From the NCBI RefSeq assembly GCF_022045235.1, contig NW_027266265.1, positions 29,140,001 through 29,204,000 of the forward strand: a DNA stretch of 64,000 nucleotides. Reading direction: 5' to 3'. This stretch comes from Haliotis cracherodii (taxonomy: Eukaryota). The notes beneath the pieces were generated by a model. The model worked only from the letters and a program-made list of their open reading frames with translations, did no database searches and had not been told where the DNA came from. Numbering within the stretch: the first letter of the stretch is position 1; each line of letters begins with the position of its first letter. Below, piece after piece: positions 2,670-63,915 of this stretch. The position numbers and the translations under genes are program-made.

Positions 2670-5318
2670 ATGGTTCGGTCTCAAGTGTGTGTGGCACTTC
2701 TTGTCGTGGCCGTTTGTGCCGCAGCCCAAACTCCACAAAAGTATAGTTATAGCCAAGATACCAATGCAGAGGCCAGAACTGGCAAAACTACAAAACTGTA
2801 TAGGCCGGGGTTCAATTTACCAAGCCTACAACCTACACAGAGGATCCCGACAAACAACCTCCGATATGGACAGAATGGACTCATGAACCGTGGATATTAC
2901 CAAAGGAGACAGATGTATGATGGTCAGGACATTCCTAATCCTAATTATCGACGTAGTTATGGATATTCATCATATGGTCAATACAGAGGACAACCGCTTT
3001 CTTATGGCAGGTACAGTGTTCCAGACTATGACTACTATTATCCATATAATGCTGGCTATAGATACCCAGTTCAACGAGGAGCACCATCATACGGACAGAG
3101 TCGTCCCGCAGCATATGCCCCTTCACACCCATATGGCCAAGGTGCACCCTACCTTAGGGACACACGGTATGTATCCAATACCAATTATCCAACGTTGCCT
3201 CAGTACCCACAAGGTAGTGTTATGTACGGGGGAAGTAACAATGGAAAAAATAAAGGAAGGACAGGACAAAGAGGTGCAGGCAAGAGCAGTTCTGACGGTT
3301 ATGGACAAATGATGACCCCCGGAAGAGGCAATGAACCAAATAATTCTAATGGTATCAATTTCCAGCCAAATGGAAATTATTCGTTTGATAATGGTAGACA
3401 GCAGCCTCAGTCTCCCCAGTTCGGAAGATACCCGGACCCCAAAACGAAAGAAAATCAGCGACCGTCCAGTAATGTTGACTTGGCTGCTCTCTTTGGTAAC
3501 AGTGACGATAGGCGTGAACCAGGAGCACCTAGACAACCTTCAGTCATTGATATCAATGCTCTATTAAAGAACATTAGAAACAATAATCAGTTTGATGGTC
3601 GACCATTAGTACCAACATCGATGGACCTTGGGTCAGTGTACGCAAGTGGTGGCAGGGTACAAGGGTCCAACGCTGGTCCTTCTTCCTCATCTGACAATAA
3701 AATCCAGCAGAACCTTGGAGGTGTACCCAATGGACAAATCGTAGGTGCCCCTGTGATTTATCCTAATGGTGGCCAGCAACAAACCATTCTTCCACAACGG
3801 CCTAACGTACAGGGTTCACCTGAAAGGGTCCAGGGAAGACCAATTTATTATCCTCCTAGACAGAATGCTTTTCCTGGAAGAGGCAATCCACGAGAACCTA
3901 CGCGTGGAGGTAATGCTGTTCCTCAGAGGTACCCTCAGCGAAACGGTCAACCGGGAAACAATGAAGGGATACTATTGACGGAAGAACAACTCCAACAACT
4001 GTTTCAACGACAGTCAGAAAATATGAAAGGTTCCCCTGAAGGATCTAAAAATCAGAATCAAGTACCATACTATGGCCCTTCGTCAGGGCAACCGTCAGCA
4101 CAGCCACCAACACAAGGAAGACCAAATTTACCAGGGCCAGACCAACCTGGGAACAACGTGGGCAATCAAAGGTATCCTGAAGGGAATAACCAGCCCCAGG
4201 ATATCAACGGAGGTGTTATAACCTTAACGCCTGAGCAACTTCAAAATATATTTGGGCAGTCGAGAAATTCGCAAGGTTCTATAAATTCAATGCAGGACAC
4301 CGTACCATCTCGGCAACCTCCTGTCCAGCCCCCTAGAAGATCAAGTCAGCCAGGACCTAACAACCAACAGTATCCCCAGGGGGGTGGCCAAAGGTATCCT
4401 CAGGGGAGAGACCAACGTTTTCCCCAGGGCAGTGACCAACGCTATCCTCAGGGGAGTGGCCAACGTTTTCCTCAGGGAGGTGACCAAGCTGATCCTCAGG
4501 GGAGAGACCAACGCTATCCTCAAGGGAGTGATCAACGTTTTCCCCAGGGCAGTGACCAACGCTATCCTCAGGGGAGTGGCCAGCGTTTTCCCCAGGGAGG
4601 TGACCAAGGCTATCCTCAGGGCAGTGATCAACGCTATCCTCAGGGGAGAGACCAACGTTTTCCCCAGGGCAGTGACCAACGCTATCCTCAGGGGAGTGGC
4701 CAACGTTTTCCCCAGGGAGGTGACCAACGCTATCCTCAGGGCAGTGACCAACGCTATCCTCAGGGAAGTGGCCAACGTTTTCCCCAGGGAGGTGACCAAC
4801 GCTATCCTCAAGGGAGTGACCAACGTTTTCCCCAGGGCAGTGACCAACGCTATCCTCAGGGGAGTGGCCAGCCTTTTCCCCAGGGAGGTGACCAAGGTGA
4901 TCCTCAGGGGAGAGACCAACGCTATCCTCAAGGGAGTGATCAACGTTTTCCCCAGGGCAGTGACCAACGCTATCCTCAGGGGAGTGGCCAGCCTTTTCCC
5001 CAGGGAGGTGACCAACGTGATTCTCAGGGGAGAGACCAACGTTTTCCCCAGGGCAGCGACCAAAGCTATCCTCAAGGGAGTGACCAACGCTATCCTCAGG
5101 GGAGTGACCAAGGGTATGAAGGTATACCCTTGACTGCTGAGCAAATTGAGAAACTGTTTGGACAGTCTATTGGTCAAAATGTGCCAGAAAATCCAAGTCA
5201 AGGTGACAGAAATAGTGCATCTCAGTATGAAAATACTCCGGTGACACCTAGTGGGCAGCCTACCGACAACAAACCTGGTCCCCCGACCTCTTCTGATAGA
5301 ACCGTGAACCAGGGTTAA
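2670..5318 (+). CDS. Secreted low-complexity Gln/Gly/Pro/Arg/Tyr-rich tandem-repeat protein (882 aa, single exon); candidate extracellular structural, matrix or adhesive protein
   Basis: Uninterrupted 2.6-kb ORF. Hydrophobic signal peptide MVRSQVCVALLVVAVCAAA-Q. Tyr/Gly-rich N-terminal region and about 30 copies of an 8-aa unit [DG]QR[YF]PQG[SGR]. TATA-like AATATAAAG about 50 bp upstream; AATAAA at about 5546 and 5884. Confidence 0.9.
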   Translation: MVRSQVCVALLVVAVCAAAQTPQKYSYSQDTNAEARTGKTTKLYRPGFNLPSLQPTQRIPTNNLRYGQNGLMNRGYYQRRQMYDGQDIPNPNYRRSYGYSSYGQYRGQPLSYGRYSVPDYDYYYPYNAGYRYPVQRGAPSYGQSRPAAYAPSHPYGQGAPYLRDTRYVSNTNYPTLPQYPQGSVMYGGSNNGKNKGRTGQRGAGKSSSDGYGQMMTPGRGNEPNNSNGINFQPNGNYSFDNGRQQPQSPQFGRYPDPKTKENQRPSSNVDLAALFGNSDDRREPGAPRQPSVIDINALLKNIRNNNQFDGRPLVPTSMDLGSVYASGGRVQGSNAGPSSSSDNKIQQNLGGVPNGQIVGAPVIYPNGGQQQTILPQRPNVQGSPERVQGRPIYYPPRQNAFPGRGNPREPTRGGNAVPQRYPQRNGQPGNNEGILLTEEQLQQLFQRQSENMKGSPEGSKNQNQVPYYGPSSGQPSAQPPTQGRPNLPGPDQPGNNVGNQRYPEGNNQPQDINGGVITLTPEQLQNIFGQSRNSQGSINSMQDTVPSRQPPVQPPRRSSQPGPNNQQYPQGGGQRYPQGRDQRFPQGSDQRYPQGSGQRFPQGGDQADPQGRDQRYPQGSDQRFPQGSDQRYPQGSGQRFPQGGDQGYPQGSDQRYPQGRDQRFPQGSDQRYPQGSGQRFPQGGDQRYPQGSDQRYPQGSGQRFPQGGDQRYPQGSDQRFPQGSDQRYPQGSGQPFPQGGDQGDPQGRDQRYPQGSDQRFPQGSDQRYPQGSGQPFPQGGDQRDSQGRDQRFPQGSDQSYPQGSDQRYPQGSDQGYEGIPLTAEQIEKLFGQSIGQNVPENPSQGDRNSASQYENTPVTPSGQPTDNKPGPPTSSDRTVNQG
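4363..5117 (+). repeat. Coding 24-bp tandem repeat (about 30 units) with 120-bp higher-order periodicity
   Basis: Units such as gaccaacgctatcctcaggggagt and gaccaacgttttccccagggcagt recur in a 5-unit order. Confidence 0.95.
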
Positions 5319-6512
5319 TGCCTTTGGAAGAAAAAAAAAAGGAGAAAACACTAGAATATTTGCGTGAAAATATTGCTTTGCCTTCATATCAGTTTATGTT
5401 TTTTTTGTAAAATCCTCGAGTTATTCTTTTCTCTGTATTGGCTGAAGGTGGGTCTGTTTGTTGATAATGTCTGTTTTATTCAAAATCAAACATGGCATGC
5501 TGCCAAGCATATCAGGTTTTGTTTACACGCGTGCTAAACTCTAAAAATAAATGTGTATGTCAGTTTGCCTCAAGTGGTATACATCCGTTTGAAGGATAAT
5601 GACATTTGAAGGTTGACGTTTAAAGACAGTCATCTTGACATGTTTTGGTGTGCACTTTAATGAACAGCTGCGTTTCCCGGGAGTATATCTAGTCGCTTAT
5701 TTGATTCTCTTAGATACACTAGATATGGAAACCATTAATTAGAGTTTCGTTTACATCAGCAGACATTATCTTGAAGCCGACGGGTGGGTAGCGTTTCCTA
5801 GGTTTTGCCTATTGAGCCAATCACATACGTTTTTGAAGTTGCAGTTTCGTCACACATGTTTCAGATTATGTATGTACATGATAAATAAAAACAAAAAATG
5901 TATTCACGTCTTTGTATTCGTAACAATGTGTCGTCGTATTTCAAATGACAGATGATTGTTTTAAAGTTTTGCATCCAGTGAAATAATGAGTTCACCCTGT
6001 TGGGATTCTGGGCGGTTAGAAATTGTCTGTGCTGGTCAGATAATTAAATCGACCAGGTAGTCAGGAATGCCGACTTGTATGTTATCGTACTTTGACGACA
6101 TTGAGTGTTGCTCTCAGTGTCAATCACCGGATTGTCAGGTCGGTTATTTAAGGGCCGCTGCCATACAGCTGCAATATTTCTGAGGGTGGCGTTAAACAAC
6201 TAACCAACTAATGTGTACCAACATTTTCTCTGTGATCTTTCACTTGTTGGTGAGTGTACATTGATAATGTACAAACATGTGTGGATGTACATCACTATTA
6301 ATGTATTTTTGGTTTCATAAACAAGTATTAAAAGGTAATTCTAGTTTTAGTTTGGAAGGTACGAAGCTAACGGATTTTATCCACTGAAATTTCAGCTAAT
6401 GTTGAATACTTCTTGTGAGAAATAGCATATTTAAGTGATGATGAAAAGTCGGTTTTATCTTGAAGGTTGAAACCGGTGAATAAAATGGTAGACGTGGGTA
6501 TTTTTTCACATT

Positions 6513-11180: not shown

Positions 11181-12598
11181 TTGACGCCTCATGCGTTCTT
11201 CTATAATGGAGGGGACATAGTAGACGAGGGTATTATGTTACATTCAAGCTTGTATTAGAAAATACATATAGTGAAAGGGTAATGATTTGGGCAGGACTTG
11301 TCGCAGAGATGCAAATGTGCAGGTGAATGTACCAAATGTGTTAATTATTTGGGTAAAATAATATATAAATAGATATTTAATGTAATTGTATCTGCTATTT
11401 TATGGGCAGTCGACTCTGCTTTTAAAAGACATGTCCTGTCCATATTGAAAAGGTTTTGTCGATTAATATTGTTCATCGGAACAACTGCTTAATATTTCAG
11501 CCCATCTATGCCTTTGATGATTTAAAATGAAATATCACCGTAGCATTATGATTTGCCAAACTGAAATACATGAATTATCTCACATTCAATATCGTCACAC
11601 GTCTTTATGAAAATAGGATAAATGTTTGGTCATAATGAAAGACCAAAATCGCAGAAATATAATGGTAGCTCGTATGATAGAGGCCAAAGCTCCAGGAAAT
11701 TACACGTACACGAATACATGGATTGCAATATGAATTCGTATTTACAACATTTACGGATTTTCTAGAGGCTATTCTATTCAAATTCCATGGTTTTCGTCAC
11801 ACCTTATTTTGTACAGTGTAAAGTTCGGATGAATGATCACGAAACATCACAAGCAGTAATCCACCTCGAAGCAAGACGAAGACCATCAAAGGAGAAGAAC
11901 ATGAAAGGAAAATTAGATAAATACACAATAATTGATGTACAGGTGCAGTACCAGATCATGGTTACCACAGTAACCGCATCTCCTGCGGGATGTCTGATGT
12001 ACTGTGTGGTGACTTTAGATGTACATGCTTTTGAATTCATTACCGAAACCGAGCGTTGTCATTTGAGAACAATCCTTTCCAGAATAATATTATGTAGAGC
12101 TTCATGGGTTATCCCTATAGAAGGTGGTTAGGGTTTAAACACACAAATCCCTTCAATCTGATAGAATCGGGGACGGGGATTTATGACAAGATCCGGGCAC
12201 GAGGTTGTGAGTAAGAATAGGACATCCTGCCTCCTAGCGACCGTCTGATTCATGTACTGCGTTTGCATTGTCTCATTGCTAGTTTGGGGATGACATCAGC
12301 CGATGGACTGACTACTAATCAGCTTGCCATTGTATTCTCGTTTACGGATGTTTTACATTTTCTTTCCTCGGCAACACTTGCACCAGATTCCCCATCTTAA
12401 CTTTGACTATCTTTCAAGTTCGCACACGTGAATCTTACTTGTGCAAAGACTTGCTCACGCCCGTCCGATCTCCTCCGTGATGGTCTTGCAACAACAGACA
12501 TTTACAAAAGAAATTGTTGGTTGATGATGACGAAGCTGATTGTGACGAATATCCGATTGCTGTTGAACAACATGGTTGACCTTTGAAGATACAGGGCC

Positions 12599-12654: not shown

Positions 12655-15600
12655 ATGAACACATTTATCATTTTGACTATTATAATTTCTCTACCTGCAT
12701 TATCACTGCAACAAAATGGTAAGTAACATACATGTATTAAATTAGAGATTATGAGAAGATCATTTTAACTTTATAGCAGTTCAGAATTAATACTTTTATT
12801 TATCAGTACTTAGCGTTTTATAATTTGATTTTATTATGCCTCAAACATTTTGATGGAACACAATAATTTAATTGATCATATCGTGTGATATTATTATGTA
12901 AAAGGCTTGCACGCTGTGATTTCCTTTAACTGTAACGTAGGGATGGAAAGATGTACGCTGTCATCGTTTGATGTTTATTTTAACCAACATGGACATGTGT
13001 GTATTGAAAAGATGTGCGCTGTACACCAACAACAGCAAGAATCCCATATACTAACAAGACAAATTTCAATTGTTCCGTCATGCTTTAATGAATATTGCTT
13101 GGTTTTATCTCAACCTTAATCTAAAGTATGCCACATACATGGATGCCTTACATCAATGAGCAAATACTAGCAATGCTGAATTTACTAATTACATTAATTG
13201 CTTTTTTCAGCTCCTTATACTTTTTGTAACACACTGTGTAACCTGATCAAAAGATGCTCACCTACCGCATCTTACTGTAGCGGCGCCAATGTGATCAGAC
13301 TATCGAGTTTATGCCGTTGCCAAGGTAAATATGTCATTCTAATGCTTGCTAAAATATACTTATAAGAATGATTAGAGAAAGAATGAACTTATTAGATAAA
13401 CGTTCAATATGAATAGATCAAGTTTGAAGAATTAGGTAATTTATTGTCGTCTTTATATTTCTGTTTTAAGTATTCTTTATCAATAAGATAAAGAAAACAC
13501 CTTAACAGATGTATGAGTAATTCTACCAGAAGGACATAGAACGTAGGGTATCTATTTTTTTAAATAGGAATTGAAACCAGTAAATCTTGAGGTATGCTAA
13601 ATGCATTCCCCGTCTTACTGATATTTCTTTACACTCAGATCGAAAAGATAATTTTTGGGTCCTTAATTTGGCTGGTATATAAAACACTGCAGTGCCTCCT
13701 AAACCTCATCTTCGCAACATGAAATTGAACATGGACGAAATAAAACTGAAAAGTAAATTAAAGCACCATCATGATGATGATATCTGATGTTCGTGAAGGG
13801 TAAATTATGTTGGTCCTCCATTAAGGCCAAGCTGATTGAGGTCAGTGTACAGTTGATCCTGGACAAAGAGTTTCTATAATTCATGAATGACAACATCCGC
13901 AAAGCGTAATAAAAGCGACAAAACCCTTGTCATAGTCATAAGATATAATCTGCGAAAAGAAGAGTCCACGGTAAGATTCCGTCTTATCATAATCATGTGA
14001 AGAACATATATATTATTGTCATTATTACATCTTTAAATGGATTATTATTTGGGTGGTCAAGTGATCGAAAGTGAGACGATGTGCTGTGCAGGTGAAGACT
14101 TTGTATCTTAGATGTCATTATCAGACACAGATCGAACATCAGACTGGCCCAGATGGACGTACTTGGTGATCTAGTGATCAATAGCCATTCTTTTCTTTAC
14201 AGAAGGTACAGGGATTGGCAATCCTCCTACAAGAAGGCCTACAAGAAGGCCTACAAGAACAACTACTACCACTACTACTACGACGACAACAACAACTCGG
14301 GCGCCATTTGTCAATAACCGTGAGGCAACATGTCGTTTATTTGATACACAATCAATAAATATCTATTTAGCAATTATCTACGCAACCTTAAGAAAACAGA
14401 TACATAATCCTTTTGTGAAAGTTCGAAAGTTAATGCTTTGTCATACGATGAAACCTTGTTAACTCGAACCTCTGAAACCATTAACTCGGTATACATGGTT
14501 AACTTAATGATCCCAGTAGGATCTCCATAAATCGATAAGTTGTCTAATATGAAAACTAAGTTTGTTTCAAACCACGGATAACTTGATATTGTGCGATGTA
14601 GTCAGAATTTTCTGAAACCTTAATACTTCATATACATGTATACATCTATTTGTAGAATGCGGCATCAGTGGAATTGCAAATCCTCAGGTATTTGTGGATT
14701 CCTTGCCTCGCATAGTGGGTGGGTATGACGCCCCAGAGACCTACTTTCCGTGGCAAGTGATTATCAAACCTGGTAGTGCCCGTTGTGGCGGCACAATCAT
14801 CAGCACAGACACTGTCATCACGGCTGCACACTGTGTGAAGTTAGTCATTTTGTACATAATTTGTCTCATGAAATTGTTTAAAAATGAATGTGGTTAGAAA
14901 CTGGTCAGGGTTACATATGAGTTTACATTTTGTTGATATATAATTACACACAGAGATGTTTCAACTCTGATACCTGAACAACCCAAATAGCTCTCGTACT
15001 CTTATTGTGTTTCTATTTTCTGTTTTAGATTTATGGAAATACATTTAATTTTAAATTTAGGACATCGTAGGACTTTATCATCAACACGGATTATCATATA
15101 CGATAAGGGTTGTTGATTCGTCACTGGAAATGGACAATGTTCCTCCTACAATGCATCACATAGATACATACATAGATACACACATAGATACATGCATGCA
15201 TGCATCCATCCATGCATCCATCCACCCCCCACNNNNNNNNNNNNNNNNNNNNNNNNNNNNNNNNNNNNNNNNNNNNNNNNNNNNNNNNNNNNNNNNNNNN
15301 NNNNNNNNNNNNNNNNNNNNNNNNNNNNNNNNNNNNNNNNNNNNNNNNNNNNNNNNNNNNNNNNNNNGTATTCGGTACATAAAATATATTTATGTATTCA
15401 TTTCAGCAATTTCCGAAATAATCCTCGCTCGGTTCAAGTAGGCCATGGTTCTGTTGACAGCAACTTCGCACAATACATAACAGCTTCCCAAATAATCGTA
15501 CATCCTGGCTACAGTCAATTCTCAGGTAATTTGTATTTGTCTTGTCTGTCTAAGAAGCACCAATATTTCTATCTTTCATTTAATTCTGACATGTGTGTAA

Positions 15601-17905
15601 AAATACAGACTAAGTTCAGAAGTAATAAAACAGTTTTTGTTTTTGCTTGTTTGGTAATATAATTGTATACTTGAATATTATCTCATTCTTGCCATAACCG
15701 ATGATCTTGCTGAAGCCCTTTTATAGTATATGGCACATCGAAGCAAATTCATTCTTGTTTGTTTGTCACAAGCCAAGATTTCTTCGGAAATTGTCAAAAT
15801 CATGAACGCCATCTTATAATTTGTAAGATATATGTAAAATTAGAATATTGCCTATTTCTTTGTTGTCGTATATTACCTCATAGTGTTTTAATTTTGGACA
15901 ATCTTTTTCAGCCCCGGACATTGCGATCATCAAGTTATCGAGGTCAATCACATATACAAGGAACAGCCGCCCAGCTTGTCTTCCTCGCAATAATCAAGCA
16001 GTCGACCCTAATCAGCTAGCTGTTGTCACCGGGTGGGGGATACTTCAAGGTGAGCATTTACCACCACCACATTTGCATTTAACGGGGAGTAGGGTCGTGC
16101 ACATTTACAGTCCCAGCACGTTTGTTAACTTGTGTTAATGGTATTTGATGATACCAGCTCAATTTTCACAGTGTGTTACCTTTTTCTCTTGACATGTGAT
16201 TGAACTTTCAGGAAATCAAGAGTTGGGATATCAGTCCAGCTGATTATGAATACTTCAATTACACAGTGACAATGTCTCAGTTTCACGGAACTAATTTCAA
16301 CGTCTTGATGTACGTGAGATAGTGGATAATAGGTCCTCATGAATATACTATGGGTTCGTTATCATCTTTTGGTAACAGGGATTCTATATCCTTTGGTTTT
16401 ACTAAGGTTTAAAATTAAAGGTTGCTTGTGGGAATATGAACACACACGCATAAAAACCGGACGGCAATGCAATGACTGATGTTTTTTGGAGCATAACAAA
16501 AACTTACTTGTGTAAAATCTGAGGCCATGATCATGAACAAAATGTTCGTCACTAGAAGCTTATTGTCAAGCTCACCTGGTCATAGGGTCTCCATCCTTCT
16601 TCTTAGTGGACAGAAAGTAAACCAAACTTGTCTGCAAACATCACAACATTGTTTAAGGCGAGGGAAGATAACTAACGGAACTAATATTAAACCGAACTTT
16701 TTACGGGACAAACCCAAGCTTGATTGAGTGATTTGGGTTAAACGCCGCCTTGAACAATAATTTAGATATATCACGGCGATGTGAGAGAAAAGCCGGCTGC
16801 TATTCAGGTCTCAGTCGTTTACTACTCTGGTGAAACACTCGAGCTCGTGAATGGGGCTGACGAGCCTATAAACATGATCGAGGCGAACCGGAATTCGAAC
16901 CCGCGATCATATCTTTATGGATTAGACATGGAACGCAACTTGAACAGCGAATTTTGGAGCCTTGGATGGGCCACCTGTGTGCCCCAAACCCCAAACCCCA
17001 GATAGTATCACCCGGAATTAAAATCGTCCTCACACAAGATGAATGATTCACACGATGGAGGGAAACTTTCCATGGTTTAACGATGTGCACATTCATCTAA
17101 CGTCGATCACTATCGATGCAGGCGCTACATTAAATTGTTTATACTCGGGCTGTATTGGTATAAGTGATTGAAAGAGCATTCATACACTTCAAAATGTGTG
17201 ATATTTGTACTCATGTACGTTCATGTTGTAGAGGGCGGGAGCAGAGTTCCCAATATTATGCAGTATGTTGCTGTCCCTATCGTTGACCAGGAAGAGTGTA
17301 ACAATGACTACTTCGGAGGAATCCGCGACGGCGAGTTCTGTGCAGGCTACGCCAAAGGTGGACGTGATGCATGCCAGGTGAGATAGTCAATACAGGCGTC
17401 AGTACAAAACCAAAATGGTTCCACTTTGATAAAATTATATATTTTTTAAAATTTATTTTACTTTTTATTTTTTCTCGTTTTTTAAACTTTCTGCTTATTT
17501 GTTGCGAATTAAGAATTTGTCTTGTTACTTCGAGTATTTTCTTGTTGTTTCTTGTATTTAAAATTCTAAATTTCGAATTATTTAATTAGATTGAGTCCAT
17601 TCTACGATTCCAACTATATGATAAGCATGTGTTTATGAATCACGCACAGGTGTAATGGAATGTATCTAATAAACCCAAATATTAAGTAGAAGGAAAGTAC
17701 AAACGAAAGTTTATTTTTGAATTAATGTTTTTGTCCTTCTCTTCAGGGCGATTCCGGTGGTGCCCTTGTCATGCCAAGTCCGTCGGGCAGAACCTGGGAA
17801 CTTATCGGCGTGGTGTCCAGGGGAACTGGATGTGCCAGACCAAACAAGCCGGGCATATATGCCAGGGTGCCAAACTATGTGTCATGGATACAACAGAACC
17901 TGTAA
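12655..17905 (+). CDS. SP1: secreted trypsin-like S1A serine protease with 6-Cys N-terminal module and Thr-rich linker (about 346 aa, 8 exons)
   Basis: Exons 12655-12718 ([18 protein letters not shown] signal), 13211-13324 (Cys module), 14203-14319 (PTRR/poly-T linker), 14656-14839 (CG..PR|IVGG..TAAHC), 15407-15525, 15912-16049 (DIAII..GWG), 17232-17377 (GRDACQ), 17747-17905 (GDSGG..WIQQNL*). All GT-AG with compatible phases, total 1041 nt. AATAAA at 18005. Confidence 0.93.
15233..15367. other. Assembly gap (N run) inside SP1 intron 4
   Basis: Run of Ns following a CATC/CATA microsatellite. Confidence 1.
16724..16985 (-). mobile_element. SINE family C (diverged)
   Basis: GGCGAACCGGAATTCGAACCC and ACAGCGAATT..GGGCCACCTGTGCCCC. 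Additional diverged copies at about 470-700 (+) and 30755-31003 (-). Confidence 0.65.
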
Positions 17906-42444: not shown

Positions 42445-43890
42445 CTTGAACGTGGTTGAGATAAAATGAGTAACAAAAATGTTGTTCGTGTGATGAAACA
42501 AATCACACAAGTTATCTGGTTCTTCTCCGCCGCCTTAGAAATGCAATGACAACTTATAGTTGCTTCAAGATGTGGGCAGTGCCGCAGATCCGTAATGATG
42601 GCTACATGTAGGTGGAGAAGCACCTCATTAGTCACGCCTATCACCCGTGGGGAAATCCGAGAAGTAACACCCGATTATGCGTCATGGCTGTTCATTTAGG
42701 CTCAACGCATACCAGAACAGAGTTCGTCAGCATCATAATACTATGGGCATTATGACACAAGAGACAACGTTTGGTTACTATATGGATTTATATTTGAAGG
42801 ATGTTGACAGAGGCACAGTTATAACGACAAAACCATACAATTCCATGTACTTCCTTGTCCAGTGAAGACGTTTTGAAAATCGTGGCGTTCTATTTGACAA
42901 CGTCATAAGATGGGAACGAGGAAGATTCTGTCGCATTGTCCAACCTGGTCATGTAAATATATTTTTGTCAAAAACGTGTGTACAGATGACCCTTGGGCCA
43001 ACACTGCACACTAAAATCTTTTAAAAAGTCGTGTGTGTGTCTAGTACATCCAAGTGAGGAATAACTGAAGATGCATACAGTCTATTTACTACCTTCATAG
43101 ACGACATTGTTACAAATATTTATATGTCAAATACCTTGGTAAGATGAACATAGAAACCTTACATTATATTCATTTCAAATATTACATCTCCACTTAGGTA
43201 ATGCTCACGTCAGAGCTTTGCAAACATTTAATGCTGAGTGAGCTGATGAAAGGGAATACTGTGGGACAGTAACGCCCTCGAATTTAAACCATGACAGAGA
43301 ATTAGAGTGTTTGTACTATCGGCGTAGCTCGAAATGTGTAATATGTACAATAAACGAAATTTCTTTTCAAGACTATTTGAACACGTTCTGTTATCAGTGA
43401 TCACTATTGAGTTTGATTTAGAGCCCCTTTGAACAATTTTTTCTTTGGTCAAAGGGAAATTCGCAATGACGCAGGTCGTTAGTTGGGTGCTACTCTGTTT
43501 TTGCATATCACGACGGAGGACTCCAAAAAGGATCGTCACTCATTGTACCCATGTGGGACTCGAACCAGGCCCTTCGCTTTGACTAGTGAACCACAAGGCT
43601 ATCTTATCGCCTTTATCATGTGAGGAACCTCGAGCAAGGTCATAATGTGGACAAATACAGAAACAAGAACAGGACGAATCTGTCTTGGATTTGCGGATTC
43701 TGACGCAACTAAGGGACGCAACGTGTTGAGTTTTAGATTATCAAGAGGTTCAAAACGATTATATCTAAATGTGTACGTCTCTTATAACAGTAATATTGAT
43801 GTGAATATTCAAATGTATTCAGTATGAATCTATCGCATAAATTAACACATAATGACATCGGCCAAGCAGGTGTCCCTCCCAGAGAAGTAG

Positions 43891-46800: not shown

Positions 46801-49048
46801 TACAATCAATTAGTGATAACATGCCTCAATGTTCAGAGAAGTTCTAAGATAAATGGTGTGCGAGAGGCACGATACATGGGACACGTATCAATGACAGAAG
46901 TCCGCCATGACCATGGAGTAGCCAATCACGGATCTGGAATTCGATCCCACGAATATCATTCATACCAGTTTTCTGAATTGTGTTTCTCACCCTCAGGCAT
47001 GTAGGAAATCCAGGTGAGCAGTAGCGTATGTACTTTTTCAAACCCACTTAATTGCCTATATATTTATAGATACTACATGTGGGTCTCCCATTAACGCTAA
47101 GTGTCAACTAGTTGTCATATATTGATAACACATATTTTGCAGTTAATGCGGGACACTGGTAGCACAGTCGTCTAAGGCGCCGCAGGTCGCTGTTCAGAGT
47201 TACGTCCCTTGGACACACCAGAAACCTACGATTGAATCCCGGTTCGCCCCGATTATGTTTCTAGGTCTGTCAGCACGATACCCATGGTGGTAGTTTTTTA
47301 CCAAAATGGTTAACGTCAAAGACCTGCATCACTTCGGACTGTCTTTCCACATTAAGCTGACCCGTCGTGATAACTGGAATACTGTTCAAAGCGACGTTAA
47401 ACCCAACTGACTCATTCATAAATGTCATGTTCACATGTACTTGTATTAATTATTTGGGTAATATTTATAAAGCATGTTTTCTATTGACTTAATGATATCA
47501 TTATCTTTGAAATAAAATTTGCACTATTAATTTACTTAAATCAACCTCATTCTCTACAGTCAATACTTTTTAGTTTAATAATTAATAAAAGTACATATAT
47601 ATTTGTGCACTGGTCAGAAATACACGTGTCAGATACCTGACACAATGGGCGGCCGTGAGGATGACATCTTTTCTGATGATGGAGCCACCACACATGCCGA
47701 TCAAAGATTCCTCATCTTCCACGTTAACAGTCCATGGGAACTCTCTCTCCACTGCGTCTACACCGCCGACGACGCGCGGCATAGCGTACAGAGACGCCCT
47801 TCCAGTCACGCGGCTCACCCCACACGCCGGCTCTAAGTAAAACCAGTCAAATGGCTTAAAACAATTTCAATATATTTGCTGACGAATGCTATTCAAAACT
47901 AAGTAAGGATACGAATTTATGGAACTGATATATTGTTTCAGTACAATGCTATTATTTAAAAGTGAAGTTCCCATTTCACATGTCCAACTTATAATTTTTT
48001 AACAGTTATGTATGTAAAGTTATACCTTTATTAAGGGTAATCATAATAATAAGAATTTTATAAAAAAAATAGCATATCCACGGTAAAACTTTAGTCAGGT
48101 AAATGTGAATACGATTAAATTTAATTCTCTAGACATATTATCAAACTGAGAACACAGGTTTGAGTAAACCTTTTGATGATAATTATATCAACTGAATTTG
48201 TAAAGCATAATTTCATGTCAACTATTAAATATACGTAGGCACATTAGGTGAGTGACATGATATCGTGTTTGGAATTAAGACATTAATACAAGAAAATGCT
48301 TTGGGGGGTAAATCATGAGATAAATAAGTCACCAAATAAATGGAAATTCTGACCCCTAGCCTAAAATGGGCCATGGAATTAATGCGGGTATCCTTACTAT
48401 TGACAATTTAAAAACACTCTCTTATAATTCGTCAGCCACCATATACTAAGGGAAACTAACCGATGTCAATAGTATAGCTTTAATGCATAAATACGTTACC
48501 AGTATTTCGCGCAATGTTAAAATCAGTACAGTTGTAGTATCCAAACAGCACCGGACAGAGAAGAGAAGTGTCGAAACAATTCAGTAAAGACACACAGAAA
48601 CGTGCTCTTCTTTGCGCAGCTGAAATATAAATGATTAAATATCATATGATGAAATAATAATTAATAATGTTTAAACCCGCTATAACACGGCAATATTACT
48701 GCTGGTGTCCTCAGGTCTATGCTTCACACGATCTAACCCGGGGCTCGACAGGACGAAATAATGCATTGACATCTGCATGTACATGTTGGCTACTTGAACG
48801 TCAAATTAAAAGTGAACAATGAGACTCAATTGTCGGGAGAACATAATGACATCATGTTGGTTAAATATTTCTACCCAGCAACATGTTAACAACATTCTCA
48901 ACATAAAGATTTTTTCTCTCAAAATGAAAGCATGTTGTGTTCATTGTAAATACAAAACACATTTAGGCTTACCTCCACACCAGCACAAGAAGCTCAAAAC
49001 AGTTACACGGAAAATCAGACCTCTTCTTATATTCCAAATCATTGTCAT
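43891..49048 (-). CDS. SP4: secreted trypsin-like S1A serine protease with 4-Cys N-terminal module (about 322 aa, 7 coding exons)
   Basis: Exons 49048-48973 ([25 protein letters not shown]), 48619-48500 (Cys module), 47832-47637 (CG..PR|VVGG..TAAHC), 46590-46472, 45247-45107 (NDIAVV..GWG), 44576-44416 (GVDACT), 44046-43891 ([16 protein letters not shown]). Total 969 nt. Confidence 0.92.
47150..47417 (+). mobile_element. SINE family C
   Basis: Aligns along its length with the reverse complement of 50843-51123. Confidence 0.82.
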
Positions 49049-52260: not shown

Positions 52261-55200
52261 ATGCGTATCCTTCTTGTCATCAGCCTATTGTTCTGCATAT
52301 GCCATTGTTTTCTTGCACAAGGAGTTGGAGGTAGGTGGATGTTATAATGCATTAATTTTCTTTTGATATGTAATGGCATGTAATAGAGCTACAGTATAAA
52401 ATATGCTCTCAGGTTTATACAATTTTTCAACGTGAAATCGTTTAGCTTTTGTTGTTCAAAATCAATATAAATATATTTTTTCTGCTTTCAAATGATATGA
52501 TTTTTGTGCTGTACGTTGAACAATGTATGAGTGCTACTTGCTGGATAGCAAAGCAGTTTCAAATGTGTTTCATTTCATGTTCATGTGATCGTCTTTGAAA
52601 AATAGTAATTTTATCGATCTTTAATCAAAACGTTGCGTCGGTCCTATAGAATTGCTAATTAAGTAAGGCTTGAACAATTCATCTGCTTCTTTAATGCTAT
52701 TTATTAATATATAAAGATTTGTAAGGAAATAAGTATTTGCTAATTTGCTAAGGAAATCATGTTTACCTCAACAATGAACGATCTGTTTATTTAGTTTTTA
52801 TTTCGTGAAGATTTATGCAAGATTCTGACCGGTCTCCTTCATGATGCGGATTCCCAGCAACTCTATGACCTACTTGACTGTGATAAGATGCGTAAGTTCA
52901 TGCATATCAGCCCAACATATGAAAGATAATATCCATATTTGCAAAAAACTGTGATAAGATGCGTAAGTTCATGCATATCAGCCCAACATATGAAAGATAA
53001 TATCCATATTTGCAAAAAAATAAAGGCGAATAGTTTATATCTGATTTTTAGGTCATGTTGTTATTTAACAGTGCAAAATATGTATTTAAAAAAATATTTA
53101 ACTTTTTTTTATAAATGCTTTTGAATGAACACGTATTTGGTTTGTATGAAAAGTACTTTTGTTTGTTTTAGCATTTCATAGACCACATGTAACAACAACA
53201 GAATAGGTACGTCCTTGTCCATTTCATTTTCATCATGCATTGCATTGGATCACATAATATATTAAAGCATACCTTTATTCCAGTATCTTCATGCGGTACA
53301 GTGCTGAACAGAAAGTGCCCACACCCATGGGTAGTTATTGTTCGTGATAAGAAAAGGAAGGCTGAAATGTGTGTTGGAACACTAATAGACGAGAGGCATA
53401 TCATCACTGCTGCCCATTGCTTCAGTCAAAGGTAGGAAAATGAAATACTATTCTTAAAGGTGGACAGGGGTTGGTTAATTGGCAGTCCTAGCAAATTTGA
53501 ATCTCGTCCCTCAGATAATAGTTTCTGGGCAGAACATGTGCACTTACAGTAGAGCGTAGTCGCCATTTAACATTTGTTTAAGTTATGTTTAGGATACGAG
53601 TTGGTTGTGTCCCATGTAATACCCAGCCATATGTCTATTATCAAGCATAATCATATCTAGATTTGTAAATAAAGTTGTCCGATTCATGAATTCATTTATG
53701 ATGAACTATGTTAAAGGATAGTACGTTTGTTTTGTCATCAACATGATTTAGTTATCACACACATCACTATCACAAATTCACTAAATCTGACAAAAATCAG
53801 TATACATTTTACGAATACTATAAATATAATTTTGGGATGGACAGATCGTGTTGCCTGCATATGAAAACAGAAAAAATCGAAAAAAAATATCTGATTGTCA
53901 AGTAGCCTTCGTGTTATAACCAATACATGTTGACTACTGAGCTGCACAAATGTTTTCAACAAGCCCCCCACCTCTAATGGTTTAACCCCTCTGAAGTTAA
54001 CACCATGACGCCATTTGTTTTTGTATCATATGCTTGACGCTTCACGATTGACCGACGCTGTTCACAAGATGGTCCTGATATTGCGAGACAGGCATATTTC
54101 ATCGAATATAGGAACATGTACTTGTAAGTTCTAAACTCGTGAAGATTTTCTCAAGAGTTCTAAATTTGTTACAATTTTATATAGTGTCAAATTTAATATC
54201 ATGGAAACCCAATAGCCATTTTTTGTCAAAGAAATAACAACGACAAACACTACATTCCAAATTATCTTTACAAGGTATTTCCTCGCTGACGATGTGCATG
54301 TGGGTATGGGTTCACAAAAGGCTGGAGAGCTCACCTACATAGACTTGGAGTCCTTTACGCTTCATCCTAAATATAGAAACACTGGTTTGGCAAGTACGTT
54401 CTTACAAAACCATTTCCATAATCAATTAAATCTCTGCTGAAAACATATGGAATATAAAGAAAATCAATTAAGTCATCATTACTAAAAGGGTTGTTGTGCC
54501 TGTATCATTTTCAGGACACGATGTCGCAGTTCTCACCTTGAAGAAGAAGGTTGGGTTTACGCCCTGTATTCAGCCAATATGTATACCCGGAACAGCAACC
54601 AATCCTGAAAAGGGAGAACTGGTCACAATCGTAGGATTTGGGCGTAAGGGCGTTTTATTTTTTCCCTATATCAAACCATTTTGTCTATTTTTCAATTCTA
54701 AACAGTTGGGGGGAAAAAGCACACATACCAATGTTTGATGGTGGCTAGAAATGAGACAAACAACAAATGGTTATGCGATTGGGATGTATTTGATACGGAT
54801 ATCACATTTTGCCCCTGAAATTTACAGTGTCTCGGTTTCTGTTTTCTAGCCTATTAACTTTTGAATAACATTTCTAATTTTTGGGTCGAATCCAATTTTT
54901 GAAGCGTTTACCTTGATTTGCCCGGTAACTTGTGTAATATTGGTATGTAGTGTGACTTTTCATAGAGTTTAATTGGTGAAAAACCCCACAGTATATTGTA
55001 GATGTCAATGTGATGTCCTTTTTTGTTGTCTTACAACTTTTAATATGCCAGTTTCCTTTGATGTTTTAAGGTTTCTGGAACAAACAAAGGGCAAGATTGC
55101 AGGCAACTGTGCTACCAGTAATAAGCCGTGAGGAGTGTGTGAGCATCTACCCGGAAGTATCGGCACTACAACATTCGATCTGCGCTGGATTGTGGTCTAG

Positions 55201-55882
55201 CATATCTTCTTCGTCAGTTTGTCATGTAAGGAATTTATATTCCATGATTAATCGCACAGTCTAAGGCGCTGCAATTCGCTGTGCAGAGTTCGGTACGCCA
55301 GAAACTTATGATTGTGGATTCGAATCCCGGTTCGCCTTGATTATGTTTTTAGTTTTGTCAGCACAATATCCGAGTTTGTGGGTTTCGCCTTAGTGGAAAC
55401 CTGCATCACTTCGGACTTTCTTCCCACATTAATCTGACACGCCGTGATATAACTGGAATACTGTTCTGAACGGCGTTAAACCCATCTTACTCATTCATAA
55501 ATGTCAAGTTCACATGTACTTAATTTATTATTTTGGTAATTCTTATTGAACAAATTATCAGTTTGCTTAATAATATCATTATCGATAAAACAGAACTTAC
55601 AATTTACACCATTAATTTACTTTTCAAAGGGGAATTGAATTTAATTGAATTTTCAGTTGATAGAAATTATTAAATTTAAAATACAACTTGCACTATAAAT
55701 GATCTCACAATTTTCAGGGAAATTCAGGAGCCCCAATGATGCTTCAACGAGAATATAAGTGGTTTCTGTACGCTGTCAGCACATCACACAGGAGTTGCGA
55801 AGAAGCTGTTTCTGTGTACATAGACATTCCTCACTATGCCACCTGGATCAACAGTGTTAAAGAACATGAACAGCTCTTTTGA
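52261..55882 (+). CDS. SP5: atypical secreted S1A protease or protease homolog (triad intact, no IVGG, GNSGA instead of GDSGG; about 288 aa, 7 exons)
   Basis: Exons 52261-52330 (MRILLVISLLFCICHCFLAQG), 52811-52891 (2-Cys module), 53284-53431 (SCG..HPW..TAAHC), 54275-54393 (119 nt as in paralogs), 54515-54643 (HDVAVL..GFG), 55071-55225, 55718-55882 (GNSGAP..WINSVKEHEQLF*). Open frame of 867 nt. AATAAA at 55906. Confidence 0.85.
52877..53018 (+). repeat. 71-bp tandem duplication spanning the SP5 exon-2 donor site
   Basis: ACTGTGATAAGATGCGTAAGTTCATGCATATC...TTTGCAAAAA twice. Confidence 0.92.
55253..55497 (+). mobile_element. SINE family C
   Basis: CAGTCTAAGGCGCTGC..GATTCGAATCCCGGTTCGCC..GGCGTTAAACCC. 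Confidence 0.8.
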
Positions 55883-60577: not shown

Positions 60578-63500
60578 ATGTGGACGAAATCTGCACTTTT
60601 ACTACTTGTACTATGTGCCTTATTCCTGACAACCGACAGCGCCAGTAAGTGTTTGTCATTTTTTTGAATTATGAATAATATATATGCTCGCGCTACAATG
60701 ATTAGTTTTTTGGAATGGCAAAGTATAGCTGCCTTGTAAAAAAAGCTTTGTTTCATGTTTCCATTTATAATCACAATACTTTGTCATCATATCAAGGCGA
60801 GGTATCACGTATTGTTCATTTGATTTTTGTTAATGAGCAAGAATTAGTAACTTCATTGGGTATAGTGTTCCACAGGTTAATCGTATCCGGAAGAAATGAT
60901 TTAGCATAGGTCTGGGTTCTACATTGTATTATGTGTATGTTAGATCTATTTCTAAGGTTATAATTGATATTACCAGAGACTGGACTTGGAATGAGATCGT
61001 TGAGATATACAGGTTAAATACTGTTTTTCATTTCGTAAAATGTAGTCAATTTGAAGCGGTGTCGTGGTTCTTTGAAGGACTGAAAGTTTGTTTCGTTATA
61101 AAATTTAACATGACTGGTACCCCGAACCGCCCCACAAATAGTTCTCAATGCGTCCAAATGTAAATTATCATATATACATGTGTATATTCCCCTGTATGCA
61201 TGATGCATGCGATTGTAAATCATGGAATGATACTATGTTCAGTTCATTGAGATATATATCTCCATTACATATGCATGGATTTTAAAAATTGCAAATAATG
61301 TTATGAATTCTGTCGTATTGTTTGGCAACATTAGAAAAGCTTTCACTGCTCAACATTGCTTTTGTGAGACACTTATGTAAAGTGAATGATCGCTTGCACG
61401 TTATAGATATGGAGGTAACAATGTTCACTCAAGTCTTGCACTGTGTGGTTTCATGTCACTGTAATGTTCCGTCATATTACAGACCTATGTGGCTTCTGTG
61501 ATGTTTTAAAGCAGTGCGTAAGCTTCCCCGCCTGCAAACAGTACTGGGACATATGCAAGTGTGAAGGTATTTAAGGCTTTAAATTTCATATTACGCAAAT
61601 ACAAGGTAGCTTCACATAGCATGTTGTATTCATAAATAAAGCTGCTTCATGTTCAAAGCCTACATTGACATGTTCGCATGAATCATTTCTTGACCCATAT
61701 CTTTTTTGTTTAACTTCATTTGCAATAGTAACAATGACTATAAAATATTAATAAATGAGGTAAATGTCAAAAATATGTTTCACTACGACACTTCGGATAT
61801 ATGCATATTTAAGGATGTCTCGAAAATATGGAGTGTATAATGAAGTAACTGTTTGAACTTTTCCAAGCTATACCCACGGACATCCAATGTGGCGTTGCTG
61901 AATCTCCTCCCATACCTAGGATATCCACCTACATCGTTGGTGGACAGGACGTTGGCGAGTGCGAGTTGCCATGGACCGTAGCGCTGTTCACCAAGGGTTC
62001 CTTGCGTTGTGGAGGCGCCATCATCGACGACAGGCACATCATCAGTGCAGCTCACTGCCTCATGTTAGTATAGCTTCTTTGGCTTTTATTTTCTCGAATG
62101 AGTGGGTGAATGAGTGATTAAATATGCTTTCAGGGGAGAAGTATGACGTCGGTGGATACCTTAACTGGACGTCACAACTGTGTCCATTTGAGTAATCGAC
62201 CCAACAACGCCTTAACCACCAGGCTACATTTGTATGCCAAATATGTAAAGAATGTTATTTTCAGTTACATTTGGACCAACAAATACCATTTAGACTATGA
62301 GATAGTCTGATATGACAGCTTGATATTTAAACAGACTGTAACACGCTTGGTGAATGATGTGATTCAACGCCACGTATAAAAGTATCTTATTTATATACAT
62401 GTAACAGATGTACAAACCATTTAGCAAATCGCTGATACTTGTTGGTATGATTTATGAAGAAATGTGAATGTGCTTCGCGCACAACTTCATATCACATTCA
62501 AGTGTTGGTATCCAAGAATGGAATTATATATGATAGATATCAATTATATAGTGTACAGAGAAAACATATACATGTTTTATTTTCACATAGGGGAATAAGG
62601 AATGCCAAAGATGTAATTGTGGGGCTCGGATCCTCAGACAGACGCCGAACGCGAAATGCAACAGTATCAGCCTTCAGCATGCATCCAGAGCATTGGTCAG
62701 GTGTGTGAGAAATATTCTCCCATGTGCATGTATCAATATTTTATTCCACTTGTTGAGTTGACTAAAATGTTTACATTTCTGTAAACTGAATACCTCCCTG
62801 TTACTGAATACCTCCCGTTTCAAGTCGAATAGGATAAAGTACATATGTAAAAGTATATCTTCTGAAAATAGACTTAGCCAATCACAATTCTTAGTGTTGT
62901 AAAAGCCCTCTGAATGTCACCAGTGAGTTATCAACCATCAAGCATGGCTTCATTATAAAAAACAAATATCCATCTATACCTTTATGTTAGAATAAGAAGC
63001 CGTCTCTTTGAAAATCTTCATGTGAACAATCAATATCATGGTTTTTTTCAGATGTCAACGATATTGTAATTTTAAGACTAAAAGAACCAATCAAGTTTAG
63101 CAAATGCATACGTCCGATTTGCCTTCCACCTCAAGACCATCAGTACAAACCCATGCAGAAATGCATTGTTGCTGGGTGGGGACTTACATCAGGTGAGTGT
63201 CATACCAAGCGAGAATTTTCCGTTTATGTAAAGCAATATACTTCCAGATCCAACTTCAGACGTCTACAAGTATAAATTGCTTAGATACTTTAGAGCGTGT
63301 ACAAAGTTATTCAAAGTTCACGGAACACTCATTCCTTGTTAATAATTGTGAAAGATTTGTCAAGGATAAAGGTCTGTATAAAAATCCAAACGACAAACAT
63401 CAAGTCTTTGAATGGCATTTAGAACATACTGCCCACTTAGGAATTGACTACAGACAGCTTGTTTTCATTTACCGTTCATAAGACATACAATCATTTTCAC

Positions 63501-63915
63501 TTAAAGGATAAATAAAAAAAATATTTTGCACCCCAATCCCTTTTTGTTGTCAAACCTAAGGCATTAACTTTCTTTTGTAACAAAGGCACTTTCTTGAACA
63601 ATGTTTCAGTGATCATATTGCGGCGTGTCAGCTTGATGTGGGGAACTTTAAACACTCCAAACTATCAAGCTGTGAATGTTCCAATACGTGTGTTTATTGC
63701 CTTGTGTTGCCACCACGAGATGTGTTCTTCATGCTAAAAGTAACGGTTATAACATGTGGCATGATGTTGCAGAGACGAGGCTGTTCCAGCCGTTCCAGCT
63801 ACAGAAGGTCAAAGTACCGCTGGTGGAGTGGGAGACGTGCCAGACGGCGTACAACATGGTGGACACACAGCTCTGCGCCGGATACTTCGACAAAGGAGGA
63901 AAAGATTCGTGTAAT
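60578..63915 (+). CDS. SP6: secreted trypsin-like S1A serine protease with 6-Cys module; 3' partial (GDSGG exon lies beyond the window)
   Basis: Exons 60578-60644 (MWTKSALLLLVLCALFLTTDSA), 61483-61566 (Cys module), 61868-62063 (CG..STY|IVGG..SAAHC), 62591-62700, 63052-63192 (NDIVIL..GWG), 63773-63915 (GKDSCN|gt). A possible extra upstream exon (ATG GTG CAG|gt, 60369-60377) could splice in frame to 60548. Confidence 0.9.

What the first reader, a model, noticed from the sequence alone, without database searches (positions are those of the whole stretch)
2670..63915. Candidate genomically clustered extracellular protease cascade plus disordered substrate
Seen: all seven genes I could build encode signal peptides. 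SP1-SP4 have Asp189 (trypsin S1 pocket) and Arg-[IV]VGG activation sites. SP6 has Asp189 but a Tyr-IVGG site. SP5 has no activation site and a non-trypsin pocket (Ser189). The neighbouring 882-aa protein is disordered and carries about 30 regularly spaced Arg-[YF]-Pro sites. Established: arthropod clip-protease and horseshoe-crab clotting cascades order their members by activation-site P1 versus S1 specificity, and use small disulfide-knotted prodomains and non-catalytic homologs. Inference: a non-trypsin trigger (or SP5 as cofactor) activates SP6, which activates SP1-4, which process a secreted gel, adhesive or shell-matrix precursor. Adjacency of the repeat gene could be coincidental.
Basis: partly seen in the sequence, partly recalled or inferred. 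Interest (0 to 1): 0.8.

Follow-up and report, generated by a model that had tools for sequence, protein, structure and literature searches.

The report
Abalone trypsin gene cluster, orphan neighbour
Six neighbouring black-abalone genes for secreted trypsin-type enzymes and an abalone-only repeat protein lying among them are real, and two of the enzymes turn up in the same RNA samples as the repeat protein. Nothing yet shows that they form an ordered activation chain or that the repeat protein is their target.

Summary
I built six complete GT-AG gene models for S1 (trypsin-fold) proteases and confirmed the 882-aa open frame.

Arg|[IV]VGG activation site and Asp189.
- **E (SP5):** no activation site, Ser189, Asp194Asn, catalytic triad intact.
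- **F (SP6):** Tyr|IVGG and Asp189. Its last exon lies 371 bases past the window and encodes Thr193.
- **Assembly gap:** it lies in an intron of A and breaks no frame.
- **Repeat protein R:** 27 Arg-[YF]-Pro sites, 23 of them in a 31-unit octapeptide array. The even spacing is a by-product of tandem duplication.

New here:
- The cluster is larger, with at least ten S1-type genes including three pseudo-proteases, and R lies inside it.
- R has only one relative (Haliotis asinina) among 1.84 billion representative proteins.
- One run holds R plus spliced transcripts of C and D, with joints exactly at my exon borders. Two runs of the same study hold none of them.

The ordered cascade and the substrate role stay untested. 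The 4-Cys prodomain is not a CLIP domain. The simplest reading is a co-expressed secretory neighbourhood of self-activating trypsin-like zymogens plus an orphan disordered protein. The scan noted similar S1 clusters elsewhere in this genome.

The parts
2670..5318 (+). Gene R: single-ORF secreted protein of 882 aa. It has a signal peptide, a Tyr-rich head, a Q/P/G/N-rich middle with conserved short motifs, an octapeptide array and an acidic tail. The mature protein is about 95 kDa, pI 9.6, GRAVY -1.5, with no Cys.
   Evidence: ORF. Composition and pI. No Pfam family above cut-off. The only relative is H. asinina P0001. Single copy in its own genome. 68% of its sampled words are held by run X1.
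4363..5111 (+). Octapeptide array of R: 31 units, consensus DQR[YF]PQG[SG], of which 23 carry R-[YF]-P-Q-G.
   Evidence: Tandem Repeats Finder gives a 24-nt unit (periods 48 and 72) and a 120-nt higher-order period at 88% matches. Unit count.
2562..2592 (+). Promoter element of R, GTTGACATCATGGGTCACCTTTGGACACACA, about 40 nt upstream of a TATAAAG box. A near-copy lies upstream of gene A.
   Evidence: It is the best of 21 promoter pairs (z 4.5). The score is reached by 0.2-0.6% of random windows, which is a weak lead after correction.
12562..12593 (+). Matching promoter element of gene A, GTTGAACAACATGGTTGACCTTTGAAGATACA, upstream of TTTATAAAGG.
   Evidence: The 17-nt core occurs only at these two places in the 1.18-Gb genome. 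The pattern was derived from these two copies.
12655..17905 (+). Exons 12655-12718, 14656-14839, 15407-15525, 15912-16049, 17232-17377 and 17747-17905, with a candidate Thr-rich exon at 14203-14319. SLPR|IVGG, Asp189, GDSGG.
   Evidence: Pfam Trypsin. No RNA check.
15233..15367 (.). Assembly gap, intronic in gene A between the exon ending at 14839 and the exon starting at 15407.
   Evidence: The letters were not filled or looked up.
27347..35265 (-). Protease B. Exons 35265-35196, 32985-32863 (4-Cys prodomain), 31939-31747, 31247-31129, 29971-29825, 28748-28588 and 27502-27347. AMPR|IVGG, Asp189, GDSGG.
   Evidence: Pfam Trypsin. The prodomain donor at 32863 was chosen by homology with D. No RNA check.
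37866..42444 (-). Protease C. Exons 42444-42375, 41587-41489 (4-Cys prodomain), 41137-40936, 40163-40045, 39122-38976, 38367-38210 and 38024-37866. PGLR|IVGG, Asp189, GDSGG.
   Evidence: Spliced contigs in X1 (and one in X2) have joints at 41137/41489 and 41587/42375.
43891..49048 (-). Protease D. Exons 49048-48973, 48619-48500 (4-Cys prodomain), 47832-47637, 46590-46472, 45247-45107, 44576-44416 and 44046-43891. AMPR|VVGG, Asp189, GDSGG.
   Evidence: The donor at 48530 would make a TAG at the junction, so 48500 was used. X1 and X2 have joints at 44046/44416, 44576/45107 and 45247/46472.
52261..55882 (+). Exons 52261-52330, 53284-53431, 54275-54384 (or to 54393), 54515-54643, 55071-55225 and 55718-55882. 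No [IV]VGG, Ser189, Asp194Asn (GNSGAP). His57, Asp102 and Ser195 are kept.
   Evidence: Pfam Trypsin on two exons. No RNA check.
60578..63915 (+). Exons 60578-60644, 61868-62063, 62591-62700, 63052-63192 and 63773-63915, with the last exon 371-544 bases past the window end. ISTY|IVGG, Asp189, TDSGGP (Thr193).
   Evidence: No RNA check.
42445..43890 (-). Intergenic stretch between D's stop and C's start codon. One X1 RNA contig covers it, running from D's last two exons to the end of C's first exon.
   Evidence: table 8, record 3 (1701 letters, 6 differences). A contig across two genes does not prove a single transcript.

Best explanation
The window holds the core of an old tandem array of at least ten S1A (chymotrypsin-fold) genes of the black abalone. 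An abalone-restricted gene for a secreted, basic, disordered protein (R) sits inside the array.

A-D are ordinary secreted zymogens. Each has a signal peptide and a pro-piece that probably stays tethered through the Cys just before the cleavage site. Cleavage after Arg exposes [IV]VGG, and the pocket is of the trypsin type (Asp189). Their own activation bond fits their own predicted specificity. The simplest mechanism is therefore a self- and cross-activating pool, as with trypsinogen, and not a linear cascade.

F needs a cut after Tyr. E has lost both partners of the Ile16-Asp194 switch, so cleavage cannot regulate it. The roles of E and F are open.

R is transcribed in the same samples as C and D, so the neighbourhood probably serves one secretory tissue. 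If R and the enzymes meet outside the cell, R's exposed Arg-[YF]-Pro bonds could be cut by A-D.

Shown: gene structures, motifs, transcripts of C and D, and same-sample presence with R. Inferred: secretion, specificities, tethering, and any cleavage of R.
For: - Six complete GT-AG models with the stated motifs, with Pfam Trypsin on the exons.
- Pairwise identity is 25-54%, so the duplicates are old.
- The array continues outside the window. Downstream lie G and the pseudo-protease H. Upstream of R lie two pseudo-protease genes, at least one with calcium-binding EGF exons.
- Other S1 tandem arrays exist in the same genome.
- RNA contigs of X1 and X2 are spliced exactly at the predicted borders of C and D. 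X20 and X21 of X1's study show no cover of C/D exons and none of R's words, while X1 holds 68% and X2 37% of R's words.
- R is single-copy. Its only relative among 1.84 billion representatives is the H. asinina protein P0001.
- R's composition, pI 9.6 and GRAVY -1.5 fit a disordered secreted protein.
Against: - Co-expression rests on four coded runs of unknown tissue. If X1 and X2 are whole animals or mixed tissue, finding the genes together means little.
- Only C and D were laid on reads. A, B, E and F are unverified by RNA.
- Signal peptides and pocket specificities are read from sequence alone.
- All six proteases lack Trp215 (R, V, A, R, T, S at that place), so their real specificity may differ from textbook trypsin.
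- Synteny in other abalones could not be checked.
Confidence: 0.5

Rival explanations
1. One reading: an ordered extracellular cascade. A non-trypsin trigger, or E, cuts F after Tyr. F then cuts A-D after Arg, and A-D process R into a gel, adhesive or matrix, or into octapeptides.
For: - P1 and pocket logic is consistent. E has Ser189 as chymotrypsin does, F has Tyr|IVGG with Asp189, and A-D have Arg|[IV]VGG.
- Pseudo-proteases, which are common cofactors in arthropod cascades, lie in the extended cluster.
- R lies inside the cluster and occurs in the same RNA samples as C and D.
- R has 27 exposed R-[YF]-P sites.
Against:
- A-D can activate themselves.
- F has Thr at oxyanion-hole position 193, which by established S1 knowledge usually weakens catalysis.
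- E lacks the Ile16/Asp194 switch, and its residues near 216 and 226 are Ser, not Gly, so a chymotrypsin-like pocket is uncertain.
- The prodomain is not CLIP.
- The site spacing is a repeat artefact.
- In H. asinina the aromatic residue after Arg is Asn in 8 of 21 units.
Confidence: 0.1
2. Coincidence of place. The proteases are a digestive or general secreted battery, and R is an unrelated fast-evolving orphan that happens to lie in the array. Finding them together reflects complex or whole-body samples.
For: - Tandem S1 arrays are common in this genome (earlier notes s1-831979 and s1-838517).
- The tissue of X1 and X2 is unknown.
- Only one protease promoter (A) shares an element with R, and that similarity is borderline.
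- R was not found among H. laevigata shell-matrix sequences, so no independent functional placing exists.
Against: - The presence/absence pattern agrees across four runs.
- R is flanked by S1-type genes on both sides.
Confidence: 0.3
3. R is a precursor of many copies of a bioactive octapeptide ([YF]PQG[SG]DQR), a pheromone or signal. The clustered trypsin-like enzymes release it outside the cell.
For: Twenty-three near-identical units are each bounded by a single Arg. An array also exists in H. asinina.
Against: - The array has no dibasic sites and no Gly-amidation signals. The whole protein has only four [KR][KR] pairs, all outside the array.
- The unit sequence differs between the two species (DQR[YF]P against DPR[YN]P).
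- The array looks recently homogenised, which is typical of structural low-complexity repeats.
- The large conserved non-array part would be unexplained.
Confidence: 0.05

Closest known systems
Digestive trypsinogen/chymotrypsinogen gene arrays (S1A zymogens activated by tryptic cleavage)
   Same: Secreted single-domain S1A zymogens in tandem, with an Arg|IVGG bond, Asp189, and a Cys before the cleavage site that can tether the pro-piece as in chymotrypsinogen. Self- or mutual activation is possible.
   Different: B-D, and G outside the window, carry an extra 4- to 6-Cys pro-module. Trp215 is replaced in all six. Two atypical members (E, F) and pseudo-proteases sit in the same array. A digestive site of expression is not shown.
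Arthropod CLIP-domain serine protease cascades (prophenoloxidase and Toll activation) and the horseshoe-crab clotting cascade
   Same: Secreted S1A zymogens with small Cys-rich pro-modules tethered to the protease. Members differ in activation P1. Non-catalytic homologs lie nearby. A possible Arg-cleaved secreted substrate is present.
   Different: There is no CLIP domain: 4 Cys, no Pfam match, predicted helical. R has no coagulogen-like fold or family. No sequential activation is shown. Genes of the known cascades are not generally clustered with their substrate (my own knowledge).
Abalone trypsins with a six-Cys pro-module elsewhere in this genome (scan note s1-831979) and gene G just past the window (note s1-829821)
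   Same: Same genome, same kind of secreted trypsin-type gene in tandem with a small Cys-rich module in the same slot. The 4-Cys module of B-D aligns with the six-Cys module of G.
   Different: That note reports a beta-defensin-like fold. The module here is predicted helical and has lost two Cys. I did not test that note's claim.
Low-complexity secreted repeat proteins: basic salivary proline-rich proteins, SPRR/cornifin, mussel foot proteins
   Same: Secreted, basic, Pro/Gln/Gly-rich, with short tandem peptide repeats containing PQG or aromatic residues. Cornifin is the best, though sub-threshold, Pfam match.
   Different: No family membership (21.4 bits against a cut-off of 34.8). Lys is scarce at 1.6%, so it is a poor transglutaminase Lys donor. 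No evidence for DOPA or for adhesion.

Membership tests
S1A chymotrypsin-fold serine proteases (Pfam PF00089 Trypsin) | Match to the Trypsin profile above Pfam's cut-off | tested here: met
   Exon-by-exon hits of 22.9-42.9 bits (cut-off 20.6) for tested exons of A, B and F and for E's His57 exon. E's last exon scores 18.5 bits, just below. C and D exons were not scanned; they are placed by 50-54% identity to B.
S1A chymotrypsin-fold serine proteases (Pfam PF00089 Trypsin) | Catalytic triad His57, Asp102, Ser195 | tested here: met
   AAHC, D[IV]A and G/T-[DN]-S-G motifs are present in all six. F's Ser lies on L002.
S1A chymotrypsin-fold serine proteases (Pfam PF00089 Trypsin) | Zymogen switch: cleavage before [IV]VGG, and Asp194 to bind the new N-terminus | tested here: met
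   Met for A-D (Arg P1) and F (Tyr P1). Not met for E, which has no [IV]VGG and Asn at 194.
CLIP-domain serine proteases | N-terminal CLIP domain with six conserved Cys (Pfam PF12032) | tested here: not met
   No Pfam hit for the pro-modules of B, C, D or G at E up to 1. B-D have four Cys. AlphaFold2 predicts a helical hairpin with pLDDT 87 from only 4 sequences. No PDB fold match.
CLIP-domain serine proteases | Demonstrated ordered activation of one member by another | not testable with these tools
   Needs recombinant zymogens.
Non-catalytic serine protease homologs (pseudo-proteases) | Loss of at least one triad residue | tested here: not met
   Not met for E, whose triad is intact. Met only outside the window: H has TTSSC and RDNGG, and the gene upstream of R has LTTPLS and GDFGG.
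Clottable or cross-linked substrate families (coagulogen; SPRR/cornifin) | Profile match above cut-off for R | tested here: not met
   Cornifin scores 21.4 bits against a cut-off of 34.8, and nothing else matches.
Multi-copy neuropeptide or prohormone precursors | Repeated peptides flanked by dibasic sites | tested here: not met
   Only four [KR][KR] pairs exist (residues 79, 94, 281, 556), none inside the array.

The most novel reading that the evidence does not exclude
The cluster is a self-contained molluscan clotting- or cement-like module written as one gene neighbourhood. A cleavage-independent Ser189 protease (E) starts it, a Tyr-activated relay (F) passes it on, and Arg-activated effectors (A-D) carry it out with pseudo-protease helpers. 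They act on the orphan disordered protein R encoded among them, either to set a gel or adhesive or to shed octapeptides.
Probability: 0.08. Interest if true: 0.85.

Novelty: new member of a known kind. Interest (0 to 1): 0.4.

Why it matters
Outside arthropods and vertebrates, extracellular protease cascades are poorly known, and enzyme and substrate are rarely encoded side by side in animals. If R proved to be the target of its neighbours, the locus would give a compact, testable molluscan system for triggered gelation, adhesion or peptide release.

As it stands, the locus is:
- a well-annotated example of an old S1 tandem array with unusual members (E without the zymogen switch, F with Tyr P1 and Thr193);
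- an abalone-only secreted disordered protein;
- a first hint of shared expression between the two.

Tried and rejected
- **Full-length protease searches.** Spliced models may not be typed or sent joined, and exon-sized queries cannot reach full-length relatives in the word search. Only exon-wise Pfam and PDB sequence searches were run. These give generic S1A relatives: factor IX/XI, kallikrein, plasmin, enteropeptidase, chymotrypsin. Joined models were assembled only inside scripts from window coordinates, for local alignment.
- **Literature.** There is no paper with R's repeat peptides and none linking abalone with the auto-name of the H. asinina ortholog. No R-like sequence appears in the H. 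laevigata shell proteome supplements, and nothing useful turned up on abalone CLIP proteases or tissue-specific trypsins. The shell-matrix reading therefore has no support.
- **Shared promoter words.** No 8- to 10-mer is shared by four or more of the seven promoters. SACCTTTG is not enriched in the window, with 9 found against 4.3 expected. Only the R-A pair stands out, and only weakly.
- **First splice choices for B and D prodomain exons.** The donors at 32893 and 48530 were rejected because the D junction would create TAG and the conserved Cys-Thr would be lost.
- **The repeat at 41250-41420.** It has no Rfam match.


Full report
**What is there.** Earlier notes of this scan identify the genome as black abalone. 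The window is G000:C2:29140001-29204000.

An unbroken 882-aa frame lies at 2670-5318 (+); I call it R. Motif scans and an all-against-all comparison of stop-free segments showed six paralogous sets of trypsin-type exons.

Using paralogy, reading phase and GT/AG sites, I built six gene models, all with canonical splice sites and open frames:
- A (+) 12655-17905
- B (-) 35265-27347
- C (-) 42444-37866
- D (-) 49048-43891
- E (+) 52261-55882
- F (+) 60578-63915, plus a last exon 371-544 bases beyond the window

Pfam's Trypsin profile matches the exons one by one. Joined models were made only inside scripts from window coordinates.

**The gap.** The N run at 15233-15367 lies in the intron between A's exon ending at 14839 (phase 2) and the exon starting at 15407. 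The acceptor 39 nt after the gap is intact, and the frame closes across the junction. In the paralogs the corresponding exons are adjacent. The gap therefore affects no coding claim, although a hidden extra exon cannot be formally excluded. I did not fill it or look it up.

These hold.
- A-D have SLPR|IVGG, AMPR|IVGG, PGLR|IVGG and AMPR|VVGG, with Asp189 and GDSGG.
- F has ISTY|IVGG and Asp189.
- E lacks any [IV]VGG and has Ser189 and Asn194 (GNSGAP), yet keeps His57, Asp102 and Ser195. It is therefore not a dead homolog. This agrees with note s1-832020.
- All six begin with a Met plus hydrophobic-core exon that ends in a strong phase-1 donor.
- B, C and D have one further exon encoding a 4-Cys module, C-x5-C-x6-C-x8/9-C.

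Three additions:
- F's last exon starts TDSGGP, that is Thr at oxyanion-hole position 193.
- None of the six has Trp215.
- A may have a 117-nt Thr-rich exon at 14203-14319 that fits phase 1 at both ends.

**The repeat protein.**
- Mature R is about 95 kDa, pI 9.6, GRAVY -1.5. It is Cys-free and rich in Q, G, P, R, S, N and Y.
- It has 27 R-[YF]-P sites, 23 of them in a 31-unit octapeptide array.
- The array (4363-5111) is a 24-nt tandem repeat with a 120-nt higher-order period at 88% matches. The even spacing is therefore what tandem duplication produces, not separate evidence of design.
- No Pfam family passes its cut-off. Cornifin is the nearest, below threshold.
- The word search and a full HMMER pass over 1.84 billion representatives both found one relative only, the 800-aa H. 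asinina protein P0001, at 51-58% identity. R is single-copy in its own genome.
- Alignment with P0001 shows conserved short islands in a variable chain. The array there has units [PLS]R[YN]PQG[GS]D, with Arg mostly kept and the aromatic residue replaced by Asn in 8 of 21 units.
- R-like sequence is absent from the H. laevigata shell proteome files.

**Surroundings.** I fetched 30 kb on each side.

Downstream lie two more genes:
- G has R|IVGG, GIDSC, GDSGG and a six-Cys module that aligns with the 4-Cys module of B-D.
- H has R|IVGG, but His57 is replaced by Ser and Ser195 by Asn.

Upstream of R lie two S1-type pseudo-protease genes (LTTPLS / GDFGG), with two calcium-binding EGF exons beside the distal one, and a MULE transposase frame.

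R therefore lies inside an array of at least ten S1-type genes spanning about 115 kb. Identities of 25-54% show that the duplicates are old. The genome has other S1 arrays, and the scan has described two of them (s1-831979, s1-838517).

**Expression.**
- Nineteen coded runs from six studies hold R's non-repeat part or a part of it. X1 holds 68% of its sampled words, while X20 and X21 of the same study hold none.
- Laying X1, X20, X21 and X2 on 40900-46899 gave spliced contigs in X1 and X2. Their joints fall exactly at 41137/41489, 41587/42375, 44046/44416, 44576/45107 and 45247/46472. These are my borders for C, including its signal-peptide and prodomain exons, and for D.
- X20 and X21 covered no exon, only a ubiquitous repeat at about 41250-41420.
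- The spliced joints show that X1 and X2 are RNA. One X1 contig runs from D's last exons through the 1.45-kb spacer to the end of C's first exon. This suggests a long 3' UTR or read-through, although a contig cannot prove one molecule.
- R, C and D are therefore present together in two samples of two species and absent together in two. Tissue names are coded, so I cannot tell a digestive gland from mantle or a whole animal.

**Promoters.** Among 21 promoter pairs, only R and A share a notable element: 32 nt, GTTGA(A)CAnCATGGnTnACCTTTG..., about 40 nt upstream of a TATAAAG box in both. Its 17-nt core is unique to these two sites in the genome, but the pattern was derived from them. Against random local windows the score is reached in 0.2-0.6% of cases, which is borderline after correction. 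It contains a nuclear-receptor-like half-site (TGACCTTTG; my own knowledge). I treat it as a lead only.

**Prodomain.** No CLIP or other Pfam family matches. AlphaFold2 on the four-sequence alignment predicts a small helical hairpin with pLDDT 87, and it has no PDB fold match. The alignment is very shallow, so the fold is tentative. The Cys just before the cleavage site (CG) and the C-L-P Cys in the protease fit a chymotrypsinogen-type tether; this is inference.

**Reading.**
- The best-supported account is an old, co-expressed neighbourhood of secreted trypsin-like zymogens plus an orphan disordered protein.
- A-D can activate themselves and each other, because their activation bond matches their pocket. 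No cascade is needed.
- It is weakened by F's Thr193, by E's uncertain pocket, by the non-CLIP prodomain and by the repeat origin of R's sites.
- It survives the only refutation test I could run.

**Limits.**
- No signal-peptide or disorder predictor was available.

Noticed in passing
window 42375-44046 (-): One RNA contig of run X1 runs from D's last two exons through the whole 1.45-kb D-C spacer to the end of C's first exon. Its depth matches D's exons, not C's. This may be read-through transcription or a very long 3' UTR.
   Followed up: partly
window 14203-14319 (+): Candidate extra exon of gene A encoding [18 protein letters not shown](T)13RAPFVNN. It has a strong acceptor and donor, phase 1 at both ends and a length of 117 nt. 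It would give A a mucin-like Thr stalk, like the stalked pseudo-proteases noted elsewhere in this genome.
   Followed up: partly
L002:371-544 (371-544 bases past the window end): F's last exon begins TDSGGP, so the nearly invariant Gly193 of the oxyanion hole is Thr.
   Followed up: partly
window, all six proteases (alignment): None has Trp215. The residues at that place are R, V, A, R, T and S, which hints at an unusual extended substrate site.
   Followed up: no
L003:8156 to L004:2483 (+); L005 about 2500-7310 (+); L006 about 650-4400 (+): Three S1 pseudo-protease genes flank the window. H has His57 replaced by Ser and Ser195 by Asn but keeps R|IVGG. Two lie upstream of R (LTTPLS / GDFGG); two calcium-binding EGF exons lie beside the distal one.
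   Followed up: partly
L007:9265-10000 and on into L006 (+): Long open frame with a MULE transposase domain (Pfam 34.3 bits), beside the upstream pseudo-protease genes.
   Followed up: partly
window 41250-41420: Short interspersed repeat inside C's intron, present at enormous depth in all four RNA runs. Loose ends contain GGATTCGAACCC-like tRNA-type words. No Rfam match.
   Followed up: partly
window 9630-11177: A 41-nt minisatellite in two blocks (13 and 24 copies, 77-83% matches), between R and gene A.
   Followed up: partly
window 36880-37170: Long GT/GC-type dinucleotide microsatellite upstream of gene B, seen as (GV)n and (RV)n frames in the ORF list.
   Followed up: no
window 2562-2592 and 12562-12593: R and gene A share a 32-nt promoter element with a TGACCTTTG nuclear-receptor-like half-site at the same distance from a TATAAAG box. 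Its statistical weight is borderline.
   Followed up: partly
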